From the IMG/VR virus record IMGVR_UViG_3300037010_001227, positions 62,001-126,000 of that record: 64,000 nucleotides of DNA; one strand, given 5' to 3'. The notes beneath the pieces were generated by a model, which saw nothing but the letters and a program-made list of their open reading frames with translations, ran no database searches and had not been told where the DNA came from. Positions 1 to 63,941 of the stretch are shown in pieces. The translations under genes were made by a program, and so were the position numbers. How positions within the stretch are numbered: position 1 is the stretch's first letter; the number at the start of each line of letters is the position of its first letter.

Positions 1-1
1 A

Positions 2-97
2 TGCGTCTAAATCATCACGTTCGTCTTCTATCATCTGTAAGTAAGCTAACTCATTATAATCAGTATCTTCTGCATCATAGTCATTATAGTTCTTCAT
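2..97 (-). CDS. acidic hypothetical protein, runs off the window (MKNYNDYDAEDTDYNELAYLQ...)
   Basis: Hand translation; GAGGA SD upstream of the ATG at 97. Confidence 0.6.
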   Translation of the reverse strand, partial: MKNYNDYDAEDTDYNELAYLQMIEDERDDLDA

Positions 98-147
98 TTA
101 TATTCCTCTATGTTATTGTATCGGACTATAAATATAAAAATATAAAT

Positions 148-176
148 AAAAAGAGCCCCTATGTTAATATAGGGCA
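148..176 (-). terminator. intrinsic terminator after tRNA-Thr
   Basis: GCCCT/AGGG(G)C hairpin followed by a U-rich run on the minus strand. Confidence 0.55.
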
Positions 177-183
177 TTTAATT

Positions 184-270
184 TGGCGCGTAGTGAGAGA
201 TTTGAACTCCCGGTAGACTTTCATCGACGGATTACAAAACCGTTCCAATTGACCACTATGGGAACTACGC
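184..270 (-). tRNA. tRNA with UGU (Thr) anticodon and long variable arm
   Basis: Acceptor GCGTAGT/ACTACGC, G73, encoded CCA; anticodon arm ACGGT-TTTGTAA-TCCGT; 15-nt V region with GAT-GAAA-GTC hairpin; T-arm GGGAG-TTCAAAT-CTCTC. Confidence 0.85.
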
Positions 271-320
271 AAGTAAAAATCGCTCCCTGCCTTTGTCAGG
301 GTTTGCGCTCATGTTTGCGC

Positions 321-623
321 TCATGTTTGGTCATTATCTTGTTTATCAAGATTGATACCAAAACGAGCTGCTATCAATTTAATTACATCTTTCAACATTG
401 TAATACTATAACCACCAAGTACTAAATAAAATAAATAATCATTTACTTGACTAATATAGGTTAAAGTGTCAAAAATCTTCCATGGATTTACTGCAATACA
501 CCAATTTAATGTAATAAATGCTATAAACGCGGCGGTACTTATTACTCTTCCATAAGATGCATCAGTATTAGTACTATATACTTTTTTCCACCAATGTAAC
601 ATAAAATACCTAAACCTTACCAA
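321..623 (-). CDS. small two-TM membrane protein (holin-like size and topology)
   Basis: Two hydrophobic segments and a charged C-terminus; start may be the ATG at 602. Confidence 0.55.
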   Translation of the reverse strand: MVRFRYFMLHWWKKVYSTNTDASYGRVISTAAFIAFITLNWCIAVNPWKIFDTLTYISQVNDYLFYLVLGGYSITMLKDVIKLIAARFGINLDKQDNDQT

Positions 624-721
624 AACTTATTTAGAACTCTTCGATATCGGTATATCTTCATGGAAAAGCTATAGGTGTTTCTTTAAAGATTTTTGGAATC
701 TTTTAAAGAAGACCCCACACC

Positions 722-1798
722 CTAATGAGAACTGAATTGTCTAACCCAAACTTTAATAGATTTTTTCACATAAAAACGTAGTTTAATCAAATTTAATAAC
801 TGAATAATTCTAAAGTTACGTAAAAACCAAACCCTGTTCATTACTTTAACAATATCTTTTGTAGACGTTGGATCAGCTTTTGCAAAATTACTTACCCAAG
901 AAACTTCTGGGGACACAACAATTGGTAATTCTGACATTACCATGTCCGCTGATACAATATTAAAAGTTTCAGTAAAAGATACTTGCATACCCATATCCAT
1001 ATCTTTTATAAATTCTAAAAAATCATCATGAGATAACCATTCATGTGTTACTAAATGATGACGATAGGAATTTTTAAATAATCCTCTAAGATTATTTAAA
1101 GCTGGTTCACTTTTATTTTCTATTCTGGTTCCATTAATATGGAAATAAAGAGTCAACTGGTTTTTATCTGCAAATTCTATAGCTGCTATAGCTTGTGTTA
1201 AGTGATTTTTCAAATGTCTAACAGCACCAAAACACATTATATGAATTTCATTCTCTCTATCTCTGAATCTTACATAAGGTTCATAAAATTCCATAGGATA
1301 ACAATTAGGCAGATATAAAACTTTTTTGTCTATTTTTGATTCATCCCAATAAGGGTGGGCAGATTTAACAATAGTTTTGATATCATGGTAACTGCGCTTT
1401 GAATTACCAGAAACAGAAACATTATCGTAACCTACGTATCGTGAAATCCAATCCATAGCCATACCTTCAGTTGCTAAGAAAGGCATTTCACTATGATTTC
1501 TAATAATCCACTGTACTTTAGGATGAAGTTTATGAAGAATCTCAAATTTTTCTGGGACTACCCAAAAGGCTTCTATAACTACATGAGTAGGTTTATACTC
1601 TGTCACTAGTCTATCAATACAATTATTATCAATAGCATGAACAACTTTTACAGAAAAACCTTTTTTTCTCAAAGCATCTGCAACAAAGTTAGCACTATTT
1701 ACTAACCCAGATGACAATCCAGTTCTACAACTATATGTAGAGTTACCATAAGAGTCTTCTCTAAATTTTAAAATAAATAAAATTTTTGCCATTTCCAT
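722..1798 (-). CDS. GT-B fold glycosyltransferase (GT4-like)
   Basis: C-terminal SFTETFNIVSADMV nucleotide-sugar motif, FGAVRHLKNH strand, two-domain 358-aa size. Confidence 0.75.
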   Translation of the reverse strand: MEMAKILFILKFREDSYGNSTYSCRTGLSSGLVNSANFVADALRKKGFSVKVVHAIDNNCIDRLVTEYKPTHVVIEAFWVVPEKFEILHKLHPKVQWIIRNHSEMPFLATEGMAMDWISRYVGYDNVSVSGNSKRSYHDIKTIVKSAHPYWDESKIDKKVLYLPNCYPMEFYEPYVRFRDRENEIHIMCFGAVRHLKNHLTQAIAAIEFADKNQLTLYFHINGTRIENKSEPALNNLRGLFKNSYRHHLVTHEWLSHDDFLEFIKDMDMGMQVSFTETFNIVSADMVMSELPIVVSPEVSWVSNFAKADPTSTKDIVKVMNRVWFLRNFRIIQLLNLIKLRFYVKKSIKVWVRQFSSH

Positions 1799-1817
1799 TT
1801 CAGCCTCATATTAATGC

Positions 1818-1894
1818 TGTAGCGGGTTAAGAAATTTGAATTCTTATCGTAAGTTTGGTAGACTTTCATGCTAACTGTTGAACATCACACTCGC
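1818..1894 (-). tRNA. degenerate tRNA-Gly(ACC), possibly a pseudogene
   Basis: AAGT-CTACCAA-ACTT anticodon arm, T-arm AAGAA-TTCAAAT-TTCTT, U73; two acceptor mismatches and ACA instead of CCA. Confidence 0.6.
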
Positions 1895-1900
1895 ATAAAC

Positions 1901-2125
1901 TTAAACTTCCTTTAAAAACTCTCTTACTTCATCAGCATAACTTCTAACAATTTTTTGAATGATTAATGTTTGACCTTCATGAGAACAGCTATTAAAGAAA
2001 TGTTTAAACTCTTCTAATTCCTGATCCATACTTTTGGGAACTGCATAAATAGTTTTACCAAATTTATCAGTTGTTTTTACTGTGTCAATATAATCATTAG
2101 GATGGGTATAATCTTCAGTAGTCAT
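1901..2125 (-). CDS. hypothetical protein (MTTEDYTHP...)
   Basis: ORF track; start moved to 2125 because the 5' extension overlaps tRNA-Ser. Confidence 0.6.
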   Translation of the reverse strand: MTTEDYTHPNDYIDTVKTTDKFGKTIYAVPKSMDQELEEFKHFFNSCSHEGQTLIIQKIVRSYADEVREFLKEV

Positions 2126-2146
2126 AAAAGTCTCTAAAACTAATTC

Positions 2147-2236
2147 AGGCGGAAAACAAGAGGATCGAACTCTCATGCCCTTTCAGGTATCTTGTTTAGT
2201 AAACAAGTGCAACAAACCAGTATTTGCCTGTTTTCC
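2147..2236 (-). tRNA. tRNA-Ser(ACT), class II
   Basis: GGAAAAC/GTTTTCC acceptor, G73, CTTGT-TTACTAA-ACAAG anticodon arm, long V-arm, TTCGATC loop; ends CCT. Confidence 0.85.
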
Positions 2237-2241
2237 ATAAA

Positions 2242-2422
2242 TGACGGGCCGTTTAATCCCGTCTCTCCTTGTCGGTCATGACTCCGACTCATCTTGTAAT
2301 TTCAAGAATGCTTAATCTATGTAAGAACGTATAACACAAATCAATTATCTAGTTAGCTAGCATTTTCAATAATTGAAAACGAACTTGATTACAGCGGTTC
2401 AAACAGGAAGATCGAGGAAACC
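2242..2422 (-). ncRNA. candidate structured ncRNA, rod-like, about 180 nt
   Basis: Nested long-range complementarity (2384-2393 with 2295-2306; 2359-2364 with 2307-2312; partial end-to-end pairing) plus local hairpins; no ORF. Confidence 0.35.
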
Positions 2423-2432
2423 TATAATTTAA

Positions 2433-3029
2433 TTATAGTAGTTTCAGCCCTTTTATACGAAAAATGTCACCAAAGTTGTTCATCAGAGCTAAAGCAGTTA
2501 CTCGGTTATCTAAATCAGGTTCACTCCATTCTGTATAAAAATCAAACCTACAACTATCATAGCGTTGAAGAATCTGTTTAAGACTCTGAGAACCTTCCGG
2601 TGTTAATAATATAATCGTACCATTAGTCCAAGGCGCTAATGGATGCTCTTTCTGAAATTGAGCAACAGCATGAGCTGACTGAACTGCTTTCTGTGACTCA
2701 GATAAAGTCTCATCACAAATAATATAAAGCTTCTTTGCACCTGGATTGTTAAAATACTCTTTCCAAGTATCAATACGCTCACGTAATTTATCACTCAAAT
2801 CACGTAATCTATGTTCATATGCCTTACTGGCATTTTTTGATATAACTTCAATTGGACCTTTGTGAGTCCTATACTTGCTACGTAATTCTGACATAGCTAT
2901 ATGAAGTGCTCTATACTGAACCGTATTAGTTCCAGCGTAGGTTTTAAGTAACAGTTTAGCCTTTTTCCAAGCTTCTTTTTGTTCAGCAGTGAAATTAGGA
3001 CGAGTTTTAATAGTAGTTTCGATAGCCAT
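2433..3029 (-). CDS. PTH2-like peptidyl-tRNA hydrolase domain protein with N-terminal extension
   Basis: C-terminal QKAVQSAHAVAQF...WSEPDLDNRVTALAL pattern of phage PTH2-like proteins; SD AAGGAG before the ATG at 3029. Confidence 0.7.
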   Translation of the reverse strand: MAIETTIKTRPNFTAEQKEAWKKAKLLLKTYAGTNTVQYRALHIAMSELRSKYRTHKGPIEVISKNASKAYEHRLRDLSDKLRERIDTWKEYFNNPGAKKLYIICDETLSESQKAVQSAHAVAQFQKEHPLAPWTNGTIILLTPEGSQSLKQILQRYDSCRFDFYTEWSEPDLDNRVTALALMNNFGDIFRIKGLKLL

Positions 3030-3036
3030 TTGATGG

Positions 3037-3143
3037 TCTCCTTGAAAAATTGGCACTTTATAAAGGTGTAACTCTTCACAAGATCAAGGCGATCTACTTA
3101 CAACCTAAAGATGATTAAAGCTCATAAACATGATGTTACTCCT
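3037..3143 (-). promoter_or_regulatory. leader peptide MFMSFNHL* (3105-3131) with putative translational attenuator of the PTH2-like gene
   Basis: SD AGGAGT 6 nt before the uORF ATG; AGATC/GATCT hairpin competes with anti-SD TCGCCTTGA pairing to TCAAGGAGA (8 of 9 bp). Confidence 0.5.
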
Positions 3144-3155
3144 AATATATAATTC

Positions 3156-3229
3156 TGGTGTTTCTGACAGGAATTGAACCCGTATAAACTATTTTAGAGA
3201 TAGCTGCTCTACCGTTGAGCTACAGAAAC
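3156..3229 (-). tRNA. amber suppressor tRNA (CTA anticodon)
   Basis: GTTTCTG/CAGAAAC acceptor, A73, CCA; GCTAT-CTCTAAA-ATAGT anticodon arm; canonical D- and T-arms. Confidence 0.9.
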
Positions 3230-3319
3230 ATTTTATAGATGATAAAACCAGGGAGGTTAGCCTCGCCAATACCTGCGGTTTTATATTCCGCTATTCTATA
3301 TAGAAAGAGCTATATTAAT

Positions 3320-3410
3320 TGGCGGCAGGTGTCCGATTCGAACGGACGAAACGCTTTCACGTTTGGATGTTTTCAAGACATCTGGGTTGTAACCACTTCC
3401 CTAACCTGCC
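3320..3410 (-). tRNA. tRNA-Ser(TGA)
   Basis: GATGT-CTTGAAA-ACATC, long V-arm, G73, CCA. Confidence 0.95.
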
Positions 3411-3510
3411 TATAGTTCTTCTTTACCGTAATGTTGTAACACATGACAATTAGAACAAATCAATTGTAAGTTATCCAAATCATTTGTGCCAATGTTACAG
3501 GTTTCTACTA
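3411..3510 (-). pseudogene. C-terminal fragment of an HNH endonuclease
   Basis: Translates as GTNDLDNLQLICSNCHVLQHYGK; no intact 5' part. Confidence 0.6.
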
Positions 3511-3541
3511 TATAATAAACAACTAAGTTTTTAGTTGATTA

Positions 3542-3784
3542 TCATACTTCCTCAACTCTAAATTGATTTTTAGCTGGAACCCAACCACCGCGTTTATGCC
3601 TATATTCAATAAAATTATCAATCCAATCATGTGCCTCTAAAGAGGTTTCAAATTCCCAGTACTCCATAGTTGGAGGAATTGGATCAAATATTGGCATTCC
3701 CAACAAATCATATTGCCAACCTAAGACTTTAGGTAGATAACATTCGCCAAATGGTTGTCCTAAGTTAGTCCAAATTCTATACAT
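3542..3784 (-). CDS. hypothetical protein
   Basis: ORF track, co-oriented with the tRNA array. Confidence 0.65.
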   Translation of the reverse strand: MYRIWTNLGQPFGECYLPKVLGWQYDLLGMPIFDPIPPTMEYWEFETSLEAHDWIDNFIEYRHKRGGWVPAKNQFRVEEV

Positions 3785-3797
3785 ATAATCCTCAAAA

Positions 3798-3871
3798 TGG
3801 TTGGGAAGCTAGGAGTTGAACCTAGGCTAAGACTTTCAAAGAGTCCGGTGCTACCGTAACACTTCTTCCCA
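3798..3871 (-). tRNA. tRNA-Gln(TTG)
   Basis: T1-A72 acceptor TGGGAAG/CTTCCCA, GGACT-CTTTGAA-AGTCT, CCA. Confidence 0.9.
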
Positions 3872-3877
3872 ATAATA

Positions 3878-4171
3878 TTAATCTACTTGCTCATAAGTAG
3901 CTGTAAAGATATCTGGTTTACAAGGATAAATCTCACCAAAAGCACCTTTAATAATCCAATCATTCCAAGAAACCAAAAGATTACCTTCCAGCGTTCCAAT
4001 AGAAAGAGTTCCATCCCTAGTCCCAGCTTCTGTAGGAAATAAGGAACCTTCTGTTCCTCGTTCTAATTGCCAAGCTTGATTTAACCAAGAAGGCCAATCC
4101 GTATTACTTGCTCTACGTTCTTTAGTCATTTGAAATGCTTCAATGACCACTGGTTTCTTTCGAAATTTCAT
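3878..4171 (-). CDS. conserved phage protein (KFRKKPVVIEA...WIIKG..GE.YPCKPDIF family)
   Basis: Recognisable widespread phage family motif; SD GAGGA. Confidence 0.8.
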   Translation of the reverse strand: MKFRKKPVVIEAFQMTKERRASNTDWPSWLNQAWQLERGTEGSLFPTEAGTRDGTLSIGTLEGNLLVSWNDWIIKGAFGEIYPCKPDIFTATYEQVD

Positions 4172-4208
4172 ATCGTCCTCTACATTATATCGGACTGAAT
4201 AAAAATTT

Positions 4209-4721
4209 CTAAACCTCTTTCAACATCTGTGGGCCTTTTACGATTCCACGATCTTGGAAGAATGAAATATACTTTTTAGTTTCTTCTGGGGCATTTTTAA
4301 GACCTTTTCTGATAACATTTCCACGACCCCAATTATATGCTGCCAAAGCTTCAGAATAGTTTCCAAATGTATCAAGTAAAGATTTTAATGTTTTAGCTGC
4401 CCACTCTGCTGCTTCTAGTGGATTAAATGGATCTCCATTAAATCCACTAATATGTGCTGGCATAATCTGAAATAAACCCTTCGCCCCTCGCTGGGATTTA
4501 GCATGAGGATTTCCCTTTGACTCAATTTCAATCATATGCTTGAGAATACCTGGAGCTAATCCATATGCCTTCTCTAATGAATTCAATCCTAATTTAGCAT
4601 ACCAAACATCAGGTGATTCCTGCTGTTTGTGCGTAATTGCAGGAGGCATTGTTGTAGTTTGGTGAATCTGTTCTTGAATAATATATTGTGATTTAATAAA
4701 TTCTTCTAGTTTTAATGACAT
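4209..4721 (-). CDS. soluble lytic transglycosylase (SLT domain)
   Basis: IESKGNPHAKSQRGAKGLFQIMP and ALAAYNWG motifs. Confidence 0.9.
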   Translation of the reverse strand: MSLKLEEFIKSQYIIQEQIHQTTTMPPAITHKQQESPDVWYAKLGLNSLEKAYGLAPGILKHMIEIESKGNPHAKSQRGAKGLFQIMPAHISGFNGDPFNPLEAAEWAAKTLKSLLDTFGNYSEALAAYNWGRGNVIRKGLKNAPEETKKYISFFQDRGIVKGPQMLKEV

Positions 4722-4743
4722 ATAAATCTCTACTATTTAGTTC

Positions 4744-4830
4744 TGATGCGAGAATTGGGAGTGGAACCCACACATCACAAGGATATCACTTTCTAAGAAT
4801 GAAACGTCGAGCTAGGTCTGCCATTCTCGC
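4744..4830 (-). tRNA. tRNA-Leu(TAG) with aberrant T-loop
   Basis: GCGAGAA/TTCTCGC, A73, TCATT-CTTAGAA-AGTGA, V-arm; T-loop TTCCACT; no CCA. Confidence 0.75.
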
Positions 4831-4832
4831 AT

Positions 4833-4917
4833 GGGTGCTGATTACAGGAATCGAACCTGGTTACTTTCACGCCAGATTTACAGTCTGGTACCAAGTCCAG
4901 TAGAGAGCAGAATCAGC
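4833..4917 (-). tRNA. tRNA-Tyr(GTA)
   Basis: GCTGATT/AATCAGC, A73, CCAGA-CTGTAAA-TCTGG, V-arm, TTCGATT loop; weak D-stem. Confidence 0.85.
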
Positions 4918-4920
4918 AAA

Positions 4921-4948
4921 TAAAAAGGCCCTAAACTAATAGGGCCTA
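4921..4948 (-). terminator. intrinsic terminator immediately 5' of tRNA-Tyr
   Basis: AGGCCCT/AGGGCCT stem followed by a T run on the minus strand. Confidence 0.65.
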
Positions 4949-4968
4949 GTATAGGATATTTAGTTCGC

Positions 4969-5130
4969 TTAACTGATAGGAGTCTTGTCAATATAACCAG
5001 AAGTTTGTTGCCAAGAAATTTCCCGATTTAACTCTACTTGAGTAGGAGTCAGTGGAGTAAAAATATCAGCTGGAACTTCATATTGAAGTTTAAGGGGATC
5101 TTCTTTATCTAGTAGATAGGTTTGTGACAT
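4969..5130 (-). CDS. 53-aa hypothetical protein (MSQTYLLDKEDPLK...)
   Basis: Hand translation; SD GAGGT; below the ORF-track size cutoff. Confidence 0.6.
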   Translation of the reverse strand: MSQTYLLDKEDPLKLQYEVPADIFTPLTPTQVELNREISWQQTSGYIDKTPIS

Positions 5131-5202
5131 GGTTAGAATACCTCTATAATTTAGTTAAACTTAATTTACTTAATTATTCAAGTAAAATAAGATTTTATTT
5201 TT

Positions 5203-5280
5203 TGGTGGATCTTGTCGGTAACGATCCGACCTGTATTCTCCTTGCAAAAGAGACAACCACCCCGTGCAGTTCCAAGACCC
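5203..5280 (-). tRNA. tRNA-Ala(TGC)
   Basis: G3.U70 pair, TCTCT-TTTGCAA-GGAGA, A73, CCA; T-loop ATCGTTA. Confidence 0.9.
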
Positions 5281-5284
5281 AAAA

Positions 5285-5880
5285 TTATTTGTGTTTTATG
5301 TATCTACTACTGTCAGTAAGAAAATGTATCTCTTCATGACAGGTAGGCACAAAATTTGAAGATTTTCAATACTATTGTTTGTTCTGTCTTTATCTATACG
5401 ATAAACAATTAACAATTCCGGTAACTTATCATATCCGCAATTATTACAGTTATTTGTATTATTTCTTTTTCTATTTCTCTGTAACTATAATCTCCACTTT
5501 TAAAATCTATTCTAACTAATAAATTTCGTTCAGTTTGTTTAGCTAAATCACAACATTTATGAGAACAAAAATGTAGTCCAGATTTTTTAGAATCAAATAA
5601 TTTACTAATATAATAAGATTTTCCACATAATGAACAAACACAATTATGTGGCTTGTCTTATTTTGTAAACAGCTTATTATATAACAATATGTGCAAGATT
5701 TACAACAAAACTTAGCTCTCACTCTATTAAGTTATTTATTTTCAGCTTCAATATATCTTGCAATATAAACATTTTACAATAGTTTTTGATATATTGGCAG
5801 ATATCCTTTGTATTTATTTACAAAGAAGACAGACCATCCACTAAATAAAAGTTTACAGTCAAATACACAAACTTCTACAA
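5285..5880 (-). pseudogene. decayed HNH endonuclease with N-terminal Cys-rich repeats
   Basis: Fragments CSLCGKSY..FCSHKC, CNNCGYDK..LIVYRIDKDRTNNSIENLQILC(fs)PTCHEEIH, broken by stops and frameshifts. Confidence 0.75.
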
Positions 5881-5907
5881 AAGTCTACCAAGATTAACCT
5901 GGTTAAT

Positions 5908-5982
5908 TGGTCGGAGTAGGAGAGATCGAATCTCCGGCTTCCTGTATCCAAAACAGGCTGTCTACCACTGACTTACACTCCG
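5908..5982 (-). tRNA. tRNA-Pro(TGG)
   Basis: C1-G72, CCTGT-TTTGGAT-ACAGG, A73, CCA. Confidence 0.95.
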
Positions 5983-6043
5983 TATTTTAACATATTATCA
6001 CATATGTTGGGGAAGAACCTAACGCTTCAAATGTGAAGGTTAC

Positions 6044-6119
6044 AGGTTGCCCAAAGTAGGATTGAACTACTAACCTCACGATTATCGGTCGTGCGCTCTA
6101 CCAGTTGAGCTATTAGGCA
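6044..6119 (-). tRNA. tRNA-Ile(GAT) with C33
   Basis: CACGA-CCGATAA-TCGTG; TGCCTAA/TTGGGCA acceptor. Confidence 0.85.
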
Positions 6120-6122
6120 ATA

Positions 6123-6197
6123 TGGTGGGCTAGATTAGTATCGTCTAACCTCTCGGGATTTTCAGTCCACGCGCTAATACATCTCAGCTACTAACCC
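6123..6197 (-). tRNA. tRNA-Phe(GAA) with degenerate T-loop
   Basis: GGGTTAG/CTAGCCC, A73, CCA, CTGAAAA loop; weak anticodon stem; T-loop ACGATA. Confidence 0.75.
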
Positions 6198-6227
6198 ATA
6201 AAATAAACCATTATTTGATTTTCAAAC

Positions 6228-6406
6228 AACAAAAAACCCGCTTTTTTTTGGCGGGTTCTTGTGAAAGGAGCAAAGATGAAGCTTTATGAACAAGAACCCG
6301 CTCTAGTATGAATGGAGAAAATTGCTGGGCTAAATTGGGCATAAAAACTACGACCAACGTTGTCGTTAGTTGCAAGTAGTGATGTCTGTCCAACTTGAAA
6401 GTTCAT
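6228..6406 (-). promoter_or_regulatory. leader-peptide transcription attenuator upstream of tRNA-Phe/Ile/Pro
   Basis: 40-aa uORF 6284-6406; 12-bp antiterminator (6290-6301 with 6251-6262) mutually exclusive with terminator (6251-6257 with 6235-6241 plus U run). Confidence 0.65.
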
Positions 6407-6465
6407 ACAATTAATTCCTATTTGTATACTGGTGGATAGGAAGAAAACTTAAGATATTTATTTTT

Positions 6466-6540
6466 TGGTGCGCCCGGAGGATCTCGAAACCTCAACCCTT
6501 TCGTTAAAAGCGAAATGCTCTTCCTTTGAGCTACGGGCAC
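6466..6540 (-). tRNA. tRNA-Lys(TTT)
   Basis: TTTCG-CTTTTAA-CGAAA, A73, CCA; T53/T61 mismatch at the T-stem closing pair. Confidence 0.85.
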
Positions 6541-6544
6541 AGAA

Positions 6545-6770
6545 TAATGACAGAGATAACCTTGAAGTATTATGTCCAAACTGCCATTCATTAATAGATA
6601 CTTGAAGAGGTAAAACCAAGGAAATTCAAAACAAGGAAAATACCATACCATACCAGATGATACTTTAATTGAGGCACTAAAAGCAACTGAAACAGTAGGA
6701 CAAGTAGGTATTGTAGTAAGATTATCTCCCAAAGGTAATAACTATGTTAGAGCAAAGAGATACATGTAAA
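6545..6770 (+). pseudogene. HNH endonuclease fragments, antisense to the tRNA array
   Basis: DNLEVLCPNCHSLIDT*RGK, then (frameshifted) TLIEALKATETVGQVGIVVRLSPKGNNY. Confidence 0.6.
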
Positions 6771-6781
6771 CGTTACTAATT

Positions 6782-6864
6782 TGGCTGAGGATATTGGAAT
6801 CGAACCAATCAGGTCAAAGACGAAAGCTTAACAGGCTTTTGTACCACCACTGTACTAATCCTCA
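6782..6864 (-). tRNA. tRNA-Asn(GTT) with extended variable arm
   Basis: TGAGGAT/ATCCTCA, G73, CCA; AAAGC-CTGTTAA-GCTTT; 13-nt V region with GTC-TTT-GAC hairpin. Confidence 0.9.
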
Positions 6865-6875
6865 AAACATTAACA

Positions 6876-63864: not shown

Positions 63865-63941
63865 GGACCCTTAGCTCAGTTGGTTAGAGCATTTCCCTTT
63901 TAAGGAAGTGGTCATCGGTTCAAATCCGATAGGGTCCACCA
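63865..63941 (+). tRNA. tRNA-Lys(TTT), second copy
   Basis: GGACCCT/AGGGTCC, TTTCC-CTTTTAA-GGAAG, A73, CCA. Confidence 0.95.

What the first reader, a model, noticed from the sequence alone, without database searches (positions are those of the whole stretch)
184..270. Class II (long V-arm) tRNA carrying a Thr UGU anticodon and G73
Seen: a 15-nt variable region with a GNRA-capped hairpin, G73, G1-C72/C2-G71 and a U31.U39 mismatch. Established: bacterial long V-arms are limited to Ser, Leu, Tyr and Sec; SerRS reads the V-arm, while ThrRS reads G35/U36 and the acceptor pairs. Inference: either a nuclease-evading Thr tRNA or a Ser-charged tRNA misreading ACA codons (allo-tRNA-like).
Basis: partly seen in the sequence, partly recalled or inferred. 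Interest (0 to 1): 0.7.

Follow-up and report, generated by a model that had tools for sequence, protein, structure and literature searches.

The report
Phage threonine tRNA with extra arm
This is a real phage tRNA gene that reads the threonine codon ACA but carries the extra side arm normally seen only on serine, leucine and tyrosine tRNAs. It is one member of a recurrent, little-discussed family of such phage tRNAs, and it most likely still carries threonine rather than rewriting the genetic code.

Summary
Window 270->184 (minus strand) encodes an intact 87-nt tRNA with anticodon UGU, a 15-nt variable region forming a 3-bp GAAA-capped hairpin, G73, G1-C72/C2-G71, U31.U39 and an encoded CCA.

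It is not a one-off. I found 21 further distinct long-arm tRNA(UGU) sequences on 36 IMG/VR contigs. The same kind is annotated "tRNA-Thr" in about 100 cultured T5-like phages (87 nt) and in Aeromonas phages PX29/Ah1 (85 nt). The extra-arm stem covaries across the family.

The evidence favours threonine identity:
- The acceptor pairs are Thr-type; C2-G71 is an antideterminant for E. coli SerRS.
- The anticodon arm and T-arm match ordinary tRNA-Thr(UGU) genes of related phages.
- ACA codons in this genome align with Thr in relatives, not Ser.
- The phage encodes no class-II synthetase core of the Ser/Thr/Pro/His/Gly type (PF00587).

G73 is unique in the family, so some serylation cannot be excluded.

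In phages with the long-arm Thr tRNA, the other tRNAs that gain such an arm are mostly Asn(GUU) and Lys. These are the published targets of the PARIS nuclease AriB. Shielding from such a nuclease is a plausible purpose, but it is untested.

The parts
184..270 (-). tRNA(UGU) gene, 87 nt, 7/5 cloverleaf with a long variable arm and encoded CCA
   Evidence: ARAGORN; Rfam 46.7 bits
234..236 (-). anticodon UGU (reads ACA) in loop UUUGUAA, closed by the U31.U39 mismatch
   Evidence: the same loop and mismatch occur in ordinary tRNA-Thr(UGU) of L068 and L115
212..226 (-). 15-nt variable region; the hairpin GAU-GAAA-GUC lies at 216-225
   Evidence: the equivalent stem covaries in 13 family members
187..187 (-). 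discriminator G73, unique among 22 long-arm tRNA(UGU) variants (the others are A or U)
264..270 (-). 5' acceptor strand GCGUAGU giving G1-C72, C2-G71 and G3-C70 with 188-194
   Evidence: Thr-type in 10/10 Thr tRNAs of the clade versus G2-C71 in 19/20 Ser tRNAs
285..301 (-). terminator-like hairpin plus U run directly upstream of the tRNA
157..174 (-). terminator-like hairpin plus U run directly downstream of the tRNA
6782..6864 (-). sister case in the same tRNA cluster: 83-nt tRNA-Asn(GUU) with a 13-nt variable region (GUC-UUU-GAC hairpin), U1-A72 and G73
   Evidence: identical in relative L005

Best explanation
This is a functional phage-encoded tRNA-Thr(UGU) built on a class-II-shaped body. 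Its acceptor identity pairs, anticodon arm and T arm are those of this phage clade's ordinary tRNA-Thr(UGU). Its D arm and variable arm are of the Ser/Tyr (class II) type. It is most likely charged by the host ThrRS, which reads G1-C72, C2-G71, G35 and U36, and it decodes ACA (probably also other ACN codons) as threonine for an AT-rich phage. These steps are inferred, not shown. It belongs to a recurrent family of long-arm tRNA-Thr(UGU) in T4-like and T5-like phages. The most likely purpose of the extra arm is to change the shape next to the 3' strand of the anticodon stem, so that tRNA-targeting defence nucleases of the PARIS AriB type no longer fit while synthetase and ribosome use is kept. 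AriB cuts host Lys(UUU), Thr(UGU) and Asn(GUU) between positions 40 and 41 and also touches the D loop. This last part is circumstantial; I put it at about 0.4. The confidence given here is for the Thr-tRNA reading as a whole, not for the shield idea.
For: Intact tRNA.

Acceptor signature: in 200 unique tRNAs of the clade, all 10 Thr tRNAs have G1-C72 and C2-G71. Of the 20 Ser tRNAs, 19 have G2-C71 and 18 have A3-U70.

Nearest core relative: the ordinary tRNA-Thr(UGU) of L115. It has the same T stem GGGAG/CUCUC, and its anticodon arm differs only by a compensatory 27-43 change. L068 has an ordinary Thr(UGU) with the same U31.U39 and UUUGUAA loop directly after the homologue of the gene at 722-1798.

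Codon test: 165 ACA positions align with T 0.35 and S 0.10, or 0.61 and 0.05 at 60% identity or more. This matches ACT, ACC and ACG and is the opposite of the Ser codons. Subject ACA codons were excluded.

No class-II aaRS core in the phage genome.

Family: 36 IMG/VR contigs with 21 more distinct sequences; G1-C72 in 21/21, C2-G71 in 20/21, N73 is A or U. All five helices covary, including the extra arm.

Cultured phages annotate the same kind as tRNA-Thr.

Identity rules (PMC9976931): N73 is not a strong Thr determinant in bacteria, and C2-G71 is an antideterminant for E. coli SerRS.

For the shield idea:
- AriB targets and cut site are from PMC12409363.
- In loci with a long-arm Thr, the other long-arm class-I tRNAs are Asn 5/13 and Lys 2/20, against 1/178 for the rest (Fisher 9e-6).
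- Bas33/HildyBeyeler carries an 87-nt Thr(UGU) and an 86-nt Asn(GUU) and escapes PARIS once only T5 tRNA-Lys is supplied.
Against: - No RNA, charging or modification data exist for this phage; no RNA run was shown to hold it.
- G73 and G3-C70 are unique in the family. G73, C11-G24 and a 3-bp arm are Ser-like, and the genome's own Ser-type tRNA(ACU) also has a 3-bp arm.
- The best database matches for the body are phage tRNA-Ser(UGA) genes.
- The host, and so its ThrRS and SerRS rules, is unknown.
- The codon test shows what ACA has meant over evolutionary time. It does not measure what this tRNA carries.
- The tRNA keeps the U36AAUC motif next to the AriB cut site.
- The Asn/Lys enrichment was tested after part of the data had been seen.
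- The pattern used to collect the family fixed part of the anticodon arm.
Confidence: 0.75

Rival explanations
1. It is a serine-accepting tRNA. SerRS recognises the extra arm plus G73, and Ser is inserted at ACA codons. This would be either deliberate mistranslation or a dual Ser/Thr identity.
For: - The extra arm, G73 and C11-G24 are present.
- D arm and body are closest to phage tRNA-Ser(UGA): 79% over nt 11-74, E 8e-7.
- The genome's Ser-type tRNA(ACU) also has only a 3-bp arm.
- G73 is absent from all 21 other family members, so this copy has moved towards Ser-like features.
Against: - C2-G71, a SerRS antideterminant in E. coli (PMC9976931), and G3-C70 replace the G2-C71 and A3-U70 seen in 19 and 18 of 20 Ser tRNAs of the clade.
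- ACA aligns with Thr, not Ser.
- Anticodon and T arms are homologous to Thr(UGU).
- ThrRS would bind through G35 and U36. From established knowledge, its editing domain hydrolyses Ser-tRNA-Thr.
Confidence: 0.12
2. It is a decaying or non-decoding tRNA-like gene. Examples would be a mutated Ser(UGA) paralogue, or a decoy that binds a host nuclease without taking part in translation.
For: - It has two non-Watson-Crick pairs (U13.U22, U31.U39) and a lower Rfam score than its neighbours.
- It sits between two terminator-like hairpins with no room for a promoter of its own.
- The PARIS paper raises competition or decoy action by phage tRNAs as a possibility.
Against: - Both mismatches are normal here. 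A non-paired 13.22 is typical of class-II D arms, and U31.U39 is shared with ordinary Thr(UGU) genes of relatives.
- G18 G19, the T loop, U33, A37 and the encoded CCA are all intact.
- The family shows compensatory changes in all helices.
- It is the only Thr tRNA in a set that otherwise covers A/U-ending codons.
Confidence: 0.08
3. It is a Thr tRNA whose extra arm has no adaptive role. The arm would be a neutral product of recombination between neighbouring tRNA genes that ThrRS happens to tolerate. This is a variant of the main reading, differing only in the purpose of the arm.
For: - Phage tRNAs in this clade vary in both directions. Leu tRNAs occur with 4-7-nt variable loops, and Bas33 Leu tRNAs are 77 nt.
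- Scattered single cases of long-arm Trp, Gln, Gly, Cys and Arg tRNAs exist.
Against: - The arm is kept with compensatory changes over 22 distinct sequences in T4-like and T5-like phages.
- Gains are strongly concentrated in Thr(UGU), Asn(GUU), Lys and Ile(UAU).
Confidence: 0.3

Closest known systems
87-nt tRNA-Thr(UGU) of T5-like phages (Tequintavirus slur09, HildyBeyeler/Bas33 and about 98 records) and 85-nt tRNA-Thr of Aeromonas phages PX29/Ah1
   Same: UGU anticodon, G1-C72/C2-G71, class-II-type D arm, 13-15-nt variable region with a short capped hairpin, 7/5 cloverleaf, encoded CCA, position inside a phage tRNA cluster.
   Different: Those have A73 or U73 and U3-A70. The T5-like ones have a normal A31-U39 pair. 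Sequence identity to the window tRNA is too low for blastn to link them directly. I found no paper discussing their long arm.
Phage T5 tRNA-Lys(UUU), Thr(UGU) and Asn(GUU) variants that overcome PARIS (AriB)
   Same: Phage copies of exactly these isoacceptors rescue translation when host copies are cut (PMC12409363). The window phage carries Thr(UGU), Asn(GUU) and two Lys(UUU) genes.
   Different: T5's own Thr(UGU) is an ordinary 75-nt tRNA that escapes through base substitutions near position 40/41. Here the change is a whole extra arm, and resistance has not been tested.
allo-tRNAs (Mukai et al. 2017)
   Same: Long variable arm combined with a non-Ser, non-Leu anticodon; G73.
   Different: Allo-tRNAs have an 8/4 or 9/3 acceptor/T architecture and Ser or Ala identity elements (PMC7609411). 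This tRNA is 7/5 with Thr-type acceptor pairs.
nev-tRNAs of nematodes
   Same: Class II body carrying an anticodon of a class I amino acid (PMC3333845).
   Different: Those are eukaryotic, charged with Leu, and decode Gly or Ile codons against the standard code. Here the identity elements agree with the anticodon.
Bacterial and phage tRNA-Ser(UGA)
   Same: D arm (C11-G24, A12-U23, unpaired 13.22, 20a/20b-type loop), GAAA-capped extra arm, G73. One base separates UGA from UGU.
   Different: 2-71 and 3-70 are C-G and G-C instead of G-C and A-U. The anticodon arm and T arm match Thr(UGU) of relatives.

Membership tests
tRNA (Rfam RF00005) | Cloverleaf scoring at or above the 29-bit gathering score, with a canonical T loop, G18 G19 and U33 | tested here: met
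   46.7 bits, full-length match; ARAGORN call
Bacterial tRNA-Thr identity set | G1-C72 and C2-G71 in the acceptor stem | tested here: met
   Read from the sequence; 10/10 Thr tRNAs of the clade share it; the rule is from PMC9976931
Bacterial tRNA-Thr identity set | G35 and U36 in the anticodon | tested here: met
   Anticodon UGU
Bacterial tRNA-Thr identity set | Aminoacylation by ThrRS | not testable with these tools
   The complex prediction was not folded for protein-RNA pairs; no charging data exist
Bacterial tRNA-Ser identity set | Long variable arm and G73 | tested here: met
   15-nt region with a 3-bp stem; G73
Bacterial tRNA-Ser identity set | G2-C71 (and A3-U70) in the acceptor stem | tested here: not met
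   C2-G71 and G3-C70 here; 19/20 and 18/20 Ser tRNAs of the clade have the Ser pairs; C2-G71 is listed as a SerRS antideterminant
allo-tRNA | 12-bp acceptor branch in 8/4 or 9/3 configuration | tested here: not met
   7-bp acceptor stem plus 5-bp T stem; definition from PMC7609411
Phage long-arm tRNA-Thr(UGU) family | UGU anticodon, 12-17-nt variable region with a covarying short hairpin, class-II D arm, G1-C72/C2-G71 | tested here: met
   Alignment A4 and pair counts; 21 further variants. The D arm UCCCAUAGUGGUC.A.UGGA of L261 differs from the window's at only two bases, and L162's is similar
Phage long-arm tRNA-Thr(UGU) family | Discriminator A73 or U73 | tested here: not met
   G73 here; the 21 other variants have 11 U and 10 A
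Bacterial tRNA-Tyr (class II) | GUA anticodon and A73 | tested here: not met
   The 7-nt loop puts UGU at 34-36, and opening U31.U39 to a 9-nt loop keeps UGU central; G73. A separate Tyr(GUA) lies at 4836-4917
PARIS/AriB-resistant phage tRNA | Not cleaved by activated AriB while supporting translation | not testable with these tools
   Indirect only: Bas33 data in PMC12409363 combined with its tRNA set

The most novel reading that the evidence does not exclude
Adding a variable arm is a general, so far undescribed way for phages to shield their copies of the ANN-decoding tRNAs (Thr UGU, Asn GUU, Lys, perhaps Ile UAU) from defence nucleases that cut the 3' strand of the anticodon stem, such as PARIS AriB, while keeping cognate charging. 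The window tRNA, with its unique G73, may additionally sit on the edge between Thr and Ser identity.
Probability: 0.35. Interest if true: 0.8.

Novelty: new member of a known kind. Interest (0 to 1): 0.55.

Why it matters
The textbook rule is that only Ser, Leu, Tyr and Sec tRNAs carry a long variable arm. It does not hold in phages. Long-arm Thr, Asn and Lys tRNAs recur, including in cultured E. coli phages of the BASEL collection. Their isoacceptor set coincides with the tRNAs that the PARIS defence system destroys. That turns a metagenomic curiosity into a directly testable idea about how phages armour their tRNAs. It also warns against reading such genes as evidence of sense-codon reassignment.

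Tried and rejected
- Megablast of window 1-8000 against phages: no match.
- blastn of the tRNA against E. coli genomes: no match.
- 'relatives' search: not available for a virus record.
- Single-protein related-locus scan with the UvsX-like protein: nothing. The alignment-based scan gave 20 loci, but none has the tRNA cluster beside UvsX.
- Pattern scan for the long-arm Asn tRNA: chance hits only.
- The closest relatives could not be read at this tRNA. Contig L005 (87% UvsX) ends inside the cluster, and no DNA was served for the contig of P0122 (75% identity to the protein at 722-1798), which has a 172-nt gap at the expected place.
- DNA runs X1-X4: no variant, so no population signal.
- No RNA run was listed as holding the stretch, and three wastewater RNA runs laid nothing.
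- The ThrRS-tRNA complex prediction was not folded and is not evidence.
- Tyr reading through a shifted or enlarged anticodon loop: rejected, because UGU stays central and N73 is G.
- Stop-codon recoding as context: no genome-wide TAG or TGA signal.
- T5's own tRNA-Thr as a member of the long-arm family: rejected, because it is 75 nt and of a different sequence lineage.

Full report
**What is there**

The window is part of a 213-kb, 35% G+C virus record from IMG/VR, estimated 95% complete. It is a T4-like phage by its relatives' genes: gp23 capsid, T4-type portal, gp32 and a UvsX-like recombinase. On the minus strand, 270->184 encodes an 87-nt tRNA. ARAGORN calls it tRNA(tgt). Rfam's tRNA model gives 46.7 bits against a gathering score of 29, and places the extra bases in the variable region.

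- G1-C72, C2-G71 and G73;
- a U31.U39 mismatch closing the loop UUUGUAA;
- a 15-nt variable region with a G-C, A-U, U.G stem capped by GAAA.

CCA is encoded. U8, G18 G19, U33, A37 and the T loop are canonical. The cloverleaf is within 0.3 kcal/mol of the unconstrained minimum. No register gives a short variable loop. The sequence recurs unchanged in a second IMG/VR contig and in whole-stretch contigs of two DNA runs from microbial-mat samples; two sediment runs hold fragments with no variant where they cover it.

**Context**

The tRNA ends a cluster of at least 12 tRNA genes at 184-6864. It lies between two terminator-like hairpins. The cluster also holds:
- a Ser-type tRNA with anticodon ACU;
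- Ser(UGA);
- an amber-suppressor-like tRNA(CUA);
- an 83-nt tRNA-Asn(GUU) with a 13-nt hairpin-forming variable region.

The genome has no class-II synthetase core of the Ser/Thr/Pro/His/Gly type, so charging depends on the host. It does have a CCA-adding-enzyme homologue.

**Which amino acid?**

I collected 200 unique tRNAs from this phage clade. The sources were the genome itself, a relative with 87% UvsX identity, a 230-kb relative, a 209-kb relative, and 80 metagenome loci found through the neighbouring glycosyltransferase-like gene.

- All 10 tRNAs with Thr anticodons start G1-C72, C2-G71.
- Of the 20 Ser tRNAs, 19 have G2-C71, 18 have A3-U70 and 17 have G73.

The window tRNA therefore has the Thr acceptor signature. 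Only G73 is Ser-like, and the other Thr tRNAs have U or A at 73. The Giege-Eriani review (PMC9976931) states three relevant rules. Bacterial Thr identity rests on acceptor pairs plus anticodon bases, with no strong role for N73. C2-G71 acts as an antideterminant against E. coli SerRS. G73 blocks LeuRS and TyrRS.

With the anticodon masked, the nearest core neighbour is an ordinary (4-nt variable loop) tRNA-Thr(UGU) in relative L115. It has the same T stem GGGAG/CUCUC. Its anticodon arm differs only by a compensatory 27-43 swap. It shares the U31.U39 mismatch and the loop UUUGUAA. In the 209-kb relative, an ordinary Thr(UGU) with the same mismatch and loop sits directly after the homologue of the gene at 722-1798. 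The D arm, by contrast, is closest to Ser and Tyr tRNAs. blastn's best body matches are phage tRNA-Ser(UGA) genes. So the molecule is a mosaic: Thr acceptor pairs, Thr(UGU) anticodon and T arms, and a class-II D arm and variable arm.

**Codon test**

I aligned the genome's ORFs to all fetched relatives by tblastn and tabulated what relatives have opposite each Thr or Ser codon. Relatives' own ACA codons were left out to avoid circularity.

| Codon class | Positions | Thr in relatives | Ser in relatives |
|---|---|---|---|
| ACA, all matches | 165 | 0.35 | 0.10 |
| ACA, 60% identity or more | 69 | 0.61 | 0.05 |
| Ser codons, all matches | 23-291 per codon | about 0.05 | about 0.5 |

ACA is indistinguishable from ACT, ACC and ACG. 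ACA has therefore not been reassigned. This does not measure what the tRNA carries, but it removes the strongest form of the Ser reading.

**Not a one-off**

I scanned IMG/VR for the anticodon-arm signature followed at variable distance by a T loop. The scan found 122 tRNA(UGU) genes, 15 of them with 13-17-nt variable regions. Restricting the gap gave 36 contigs with 21 further distinct long-arm sequences:
- G1-C72 in 21/21;
- C2-G71 in 20/21;
- N73 is U in 11 and A in 10, never G;
- class-II-type D arms, one (L261) differing from the window's at only two bases and L162's similar.

On an alignment of 13 members, all five helices show compensatory changes. This includes all three pairs of the extra arm, which are 94.7% paired; no shuffle or slid register comes close. 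The caveat is that the search pattern fixed part of the anticodon arm and the T loop.

The same kind of gene is annotated tRNA-Thr in cultured phages:
- Aeromonas phages PX29 and Ah1, 85 nt;
- about 98 T5-like records, 87 nt, including slur09 and HildyBeyeler.

T5 itself has an ordinary 75-nt Thr(UGU) of another sequence lineage. I found no paper that discusses a long-arm tRNA-Thr. Allo-tRNAs are defined by 8/4 or 9/3 stems, which this tRNA lacks.

**Why an extra arm?**

Long arms on class-I isoacceptors are not spread evenly. In the 37 loci that carry a long-arm Thr(UGU), the other cases are:
- Asn(GUU), 5 of 13;
- Lys, 2 of 20;
- all remaining anticodons except Ile(UAU), 1 of 178 (Fisher 9e-6).

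This is post hoc and not corrected for relatedness. Close relatives of the window phage also have long-arm His(GUG).

Belukhina et al. (PMC12409363) show that the PARIS nuclease AriB cleaves E. coli tRNA-Lys(UUU), Thr(UGU) and Asn(GUU). His(GUG) is among the minor signals. The cut falls between positions 40 and 41, and a second contact is predicted at the D loop. Phage copies of these tRNAs restore infection.

A helix emerging at position 45 lies three to four nucleotides from that cut site, and the class-II D arm changes the second contact. Steric exclusion is therefore a reasonable mechanism.

Bas33, which is HildyBeyeler, has the 87-nt Thr(UGU), an 86-nt long-arm Asn(GUU) and no Lys(UUU). 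In the published work it escapes PARIS when only T5 tRNA-Lys is supplied. That fits its long-arm Thr and Asn tRNAs being functional and resistant. This is my inference from combining their data with the sequences; it is not a reported result.

**Verdict**

The gene is a real, probably functional tRNA-Thr(UGU) of a recurrent phage type with a class-II body. It is a new member of that type, distinguished by G73 and G3-C70. Serine charging is disfavoured but not excluded. Nuclease shielding is the best available rationale for the arm, and it is untested. No expression or charging data exist for this phage.

Noticed in passing
window 2148-2236 (-): Ser-type tRNA (G1-C72, G2-C71, A3-U70, G73, 16-nt arm) with anticodon ACU, that is A34 instead of the usual G34. 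Rfam misses it at the gathering score. Relatives carry Ser(AGA) and Phe(AAA), so A34 tRNAs for U-ending codons recur in this clade. AGT outnumbers AGC about 4:1 in conserved genes.
   Followed up: partly
window 3156-3229 (-); G000 120-135 kb: Amber-suppressor-like tRNA(CUA), 68 bits, A73. There is no genome-wide sign of TAG recoding. In G000 120-135 kb, however, coverage by ORFs of 100 aa or more rises from 0.49 to 0.66 if TAG is read as sense.
   Followed up: partly
window 6782-6864 (-); L005 11732-11814: 83-nt tRNA-Asn(GUU) with a 13-nt variable region (GUC-UUU-GAC), U1-A72 and G73. It is identical in a relative whose UvsX is only 87% identical. Other long-arm Asn(GUU) genes occur in IMG/VR loci and in phage HildyBeyeler (86 nt).
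   Followed up: partly
L005 12361-12446; L057 6500-6587: Long-arm (86-88 nt) tRNA-His(GUG) with C73 in two relatives of the window phage. Presence of G-1 was not checked.
   Followed up: no
window 4836-4917 (-), 4747-4830 (-), 6126-6197 (-): Further tRNAs not called by ARAGORN: Tyr(GUA) at 26.1 bits and Leu(UAG) at 26.0 bits, both just under Rfam's 29-bit gathering score, and a Phe(GAA)-like gene with an aberrant T arm, 31.3 bits, which exceeds 29 but appeared only in the E-value scan.
   Followed up: partly
IMG/VR loci L151-L259 (for example L158 4946-5037): Phage tRNA-Ile(UAU) genes almost always (26 of 29 unique) carry a 21-27-nt variable region. The window genome's own Ile(UAU) is ordinary. 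Any relation to the abundant UAU allo-tRNA-like genes of soil metagenomes was not examined.
   Followed up: no
L068 6989-7062; L293 5603-5679 and 10565-10641: The reverse case also occurs: tRNA-Leu genes with 4-7-nt variable loops (74-77 nt) in relatives and in T5-like phages. The arm is therefore both gained and lost in phage tRNAs.
   Followed up: no
G000 198002-198307 (outside the window): 431-aa ORF matching the CCA-adding enzyme / poly(A) polymerase family PF01743 (73 bits). No T4 Rnl1-type ligase was found.
   Followed up: no
window 6466-6540 (-) and 63865-63941 (+): Two different tRNA-Lys(UUU) genes. The first has a mismatched T stem and an unusual T loop (UUCGAGA).
   Followed up: no
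window 301-330 (+): A 12-nt unit (GTTTGCGCTCAT) repeated about 2.5 times between the 100-aa ORF at 321-623 and the terminator-like hairpin upstream of the tRNA.
   Followed up: no
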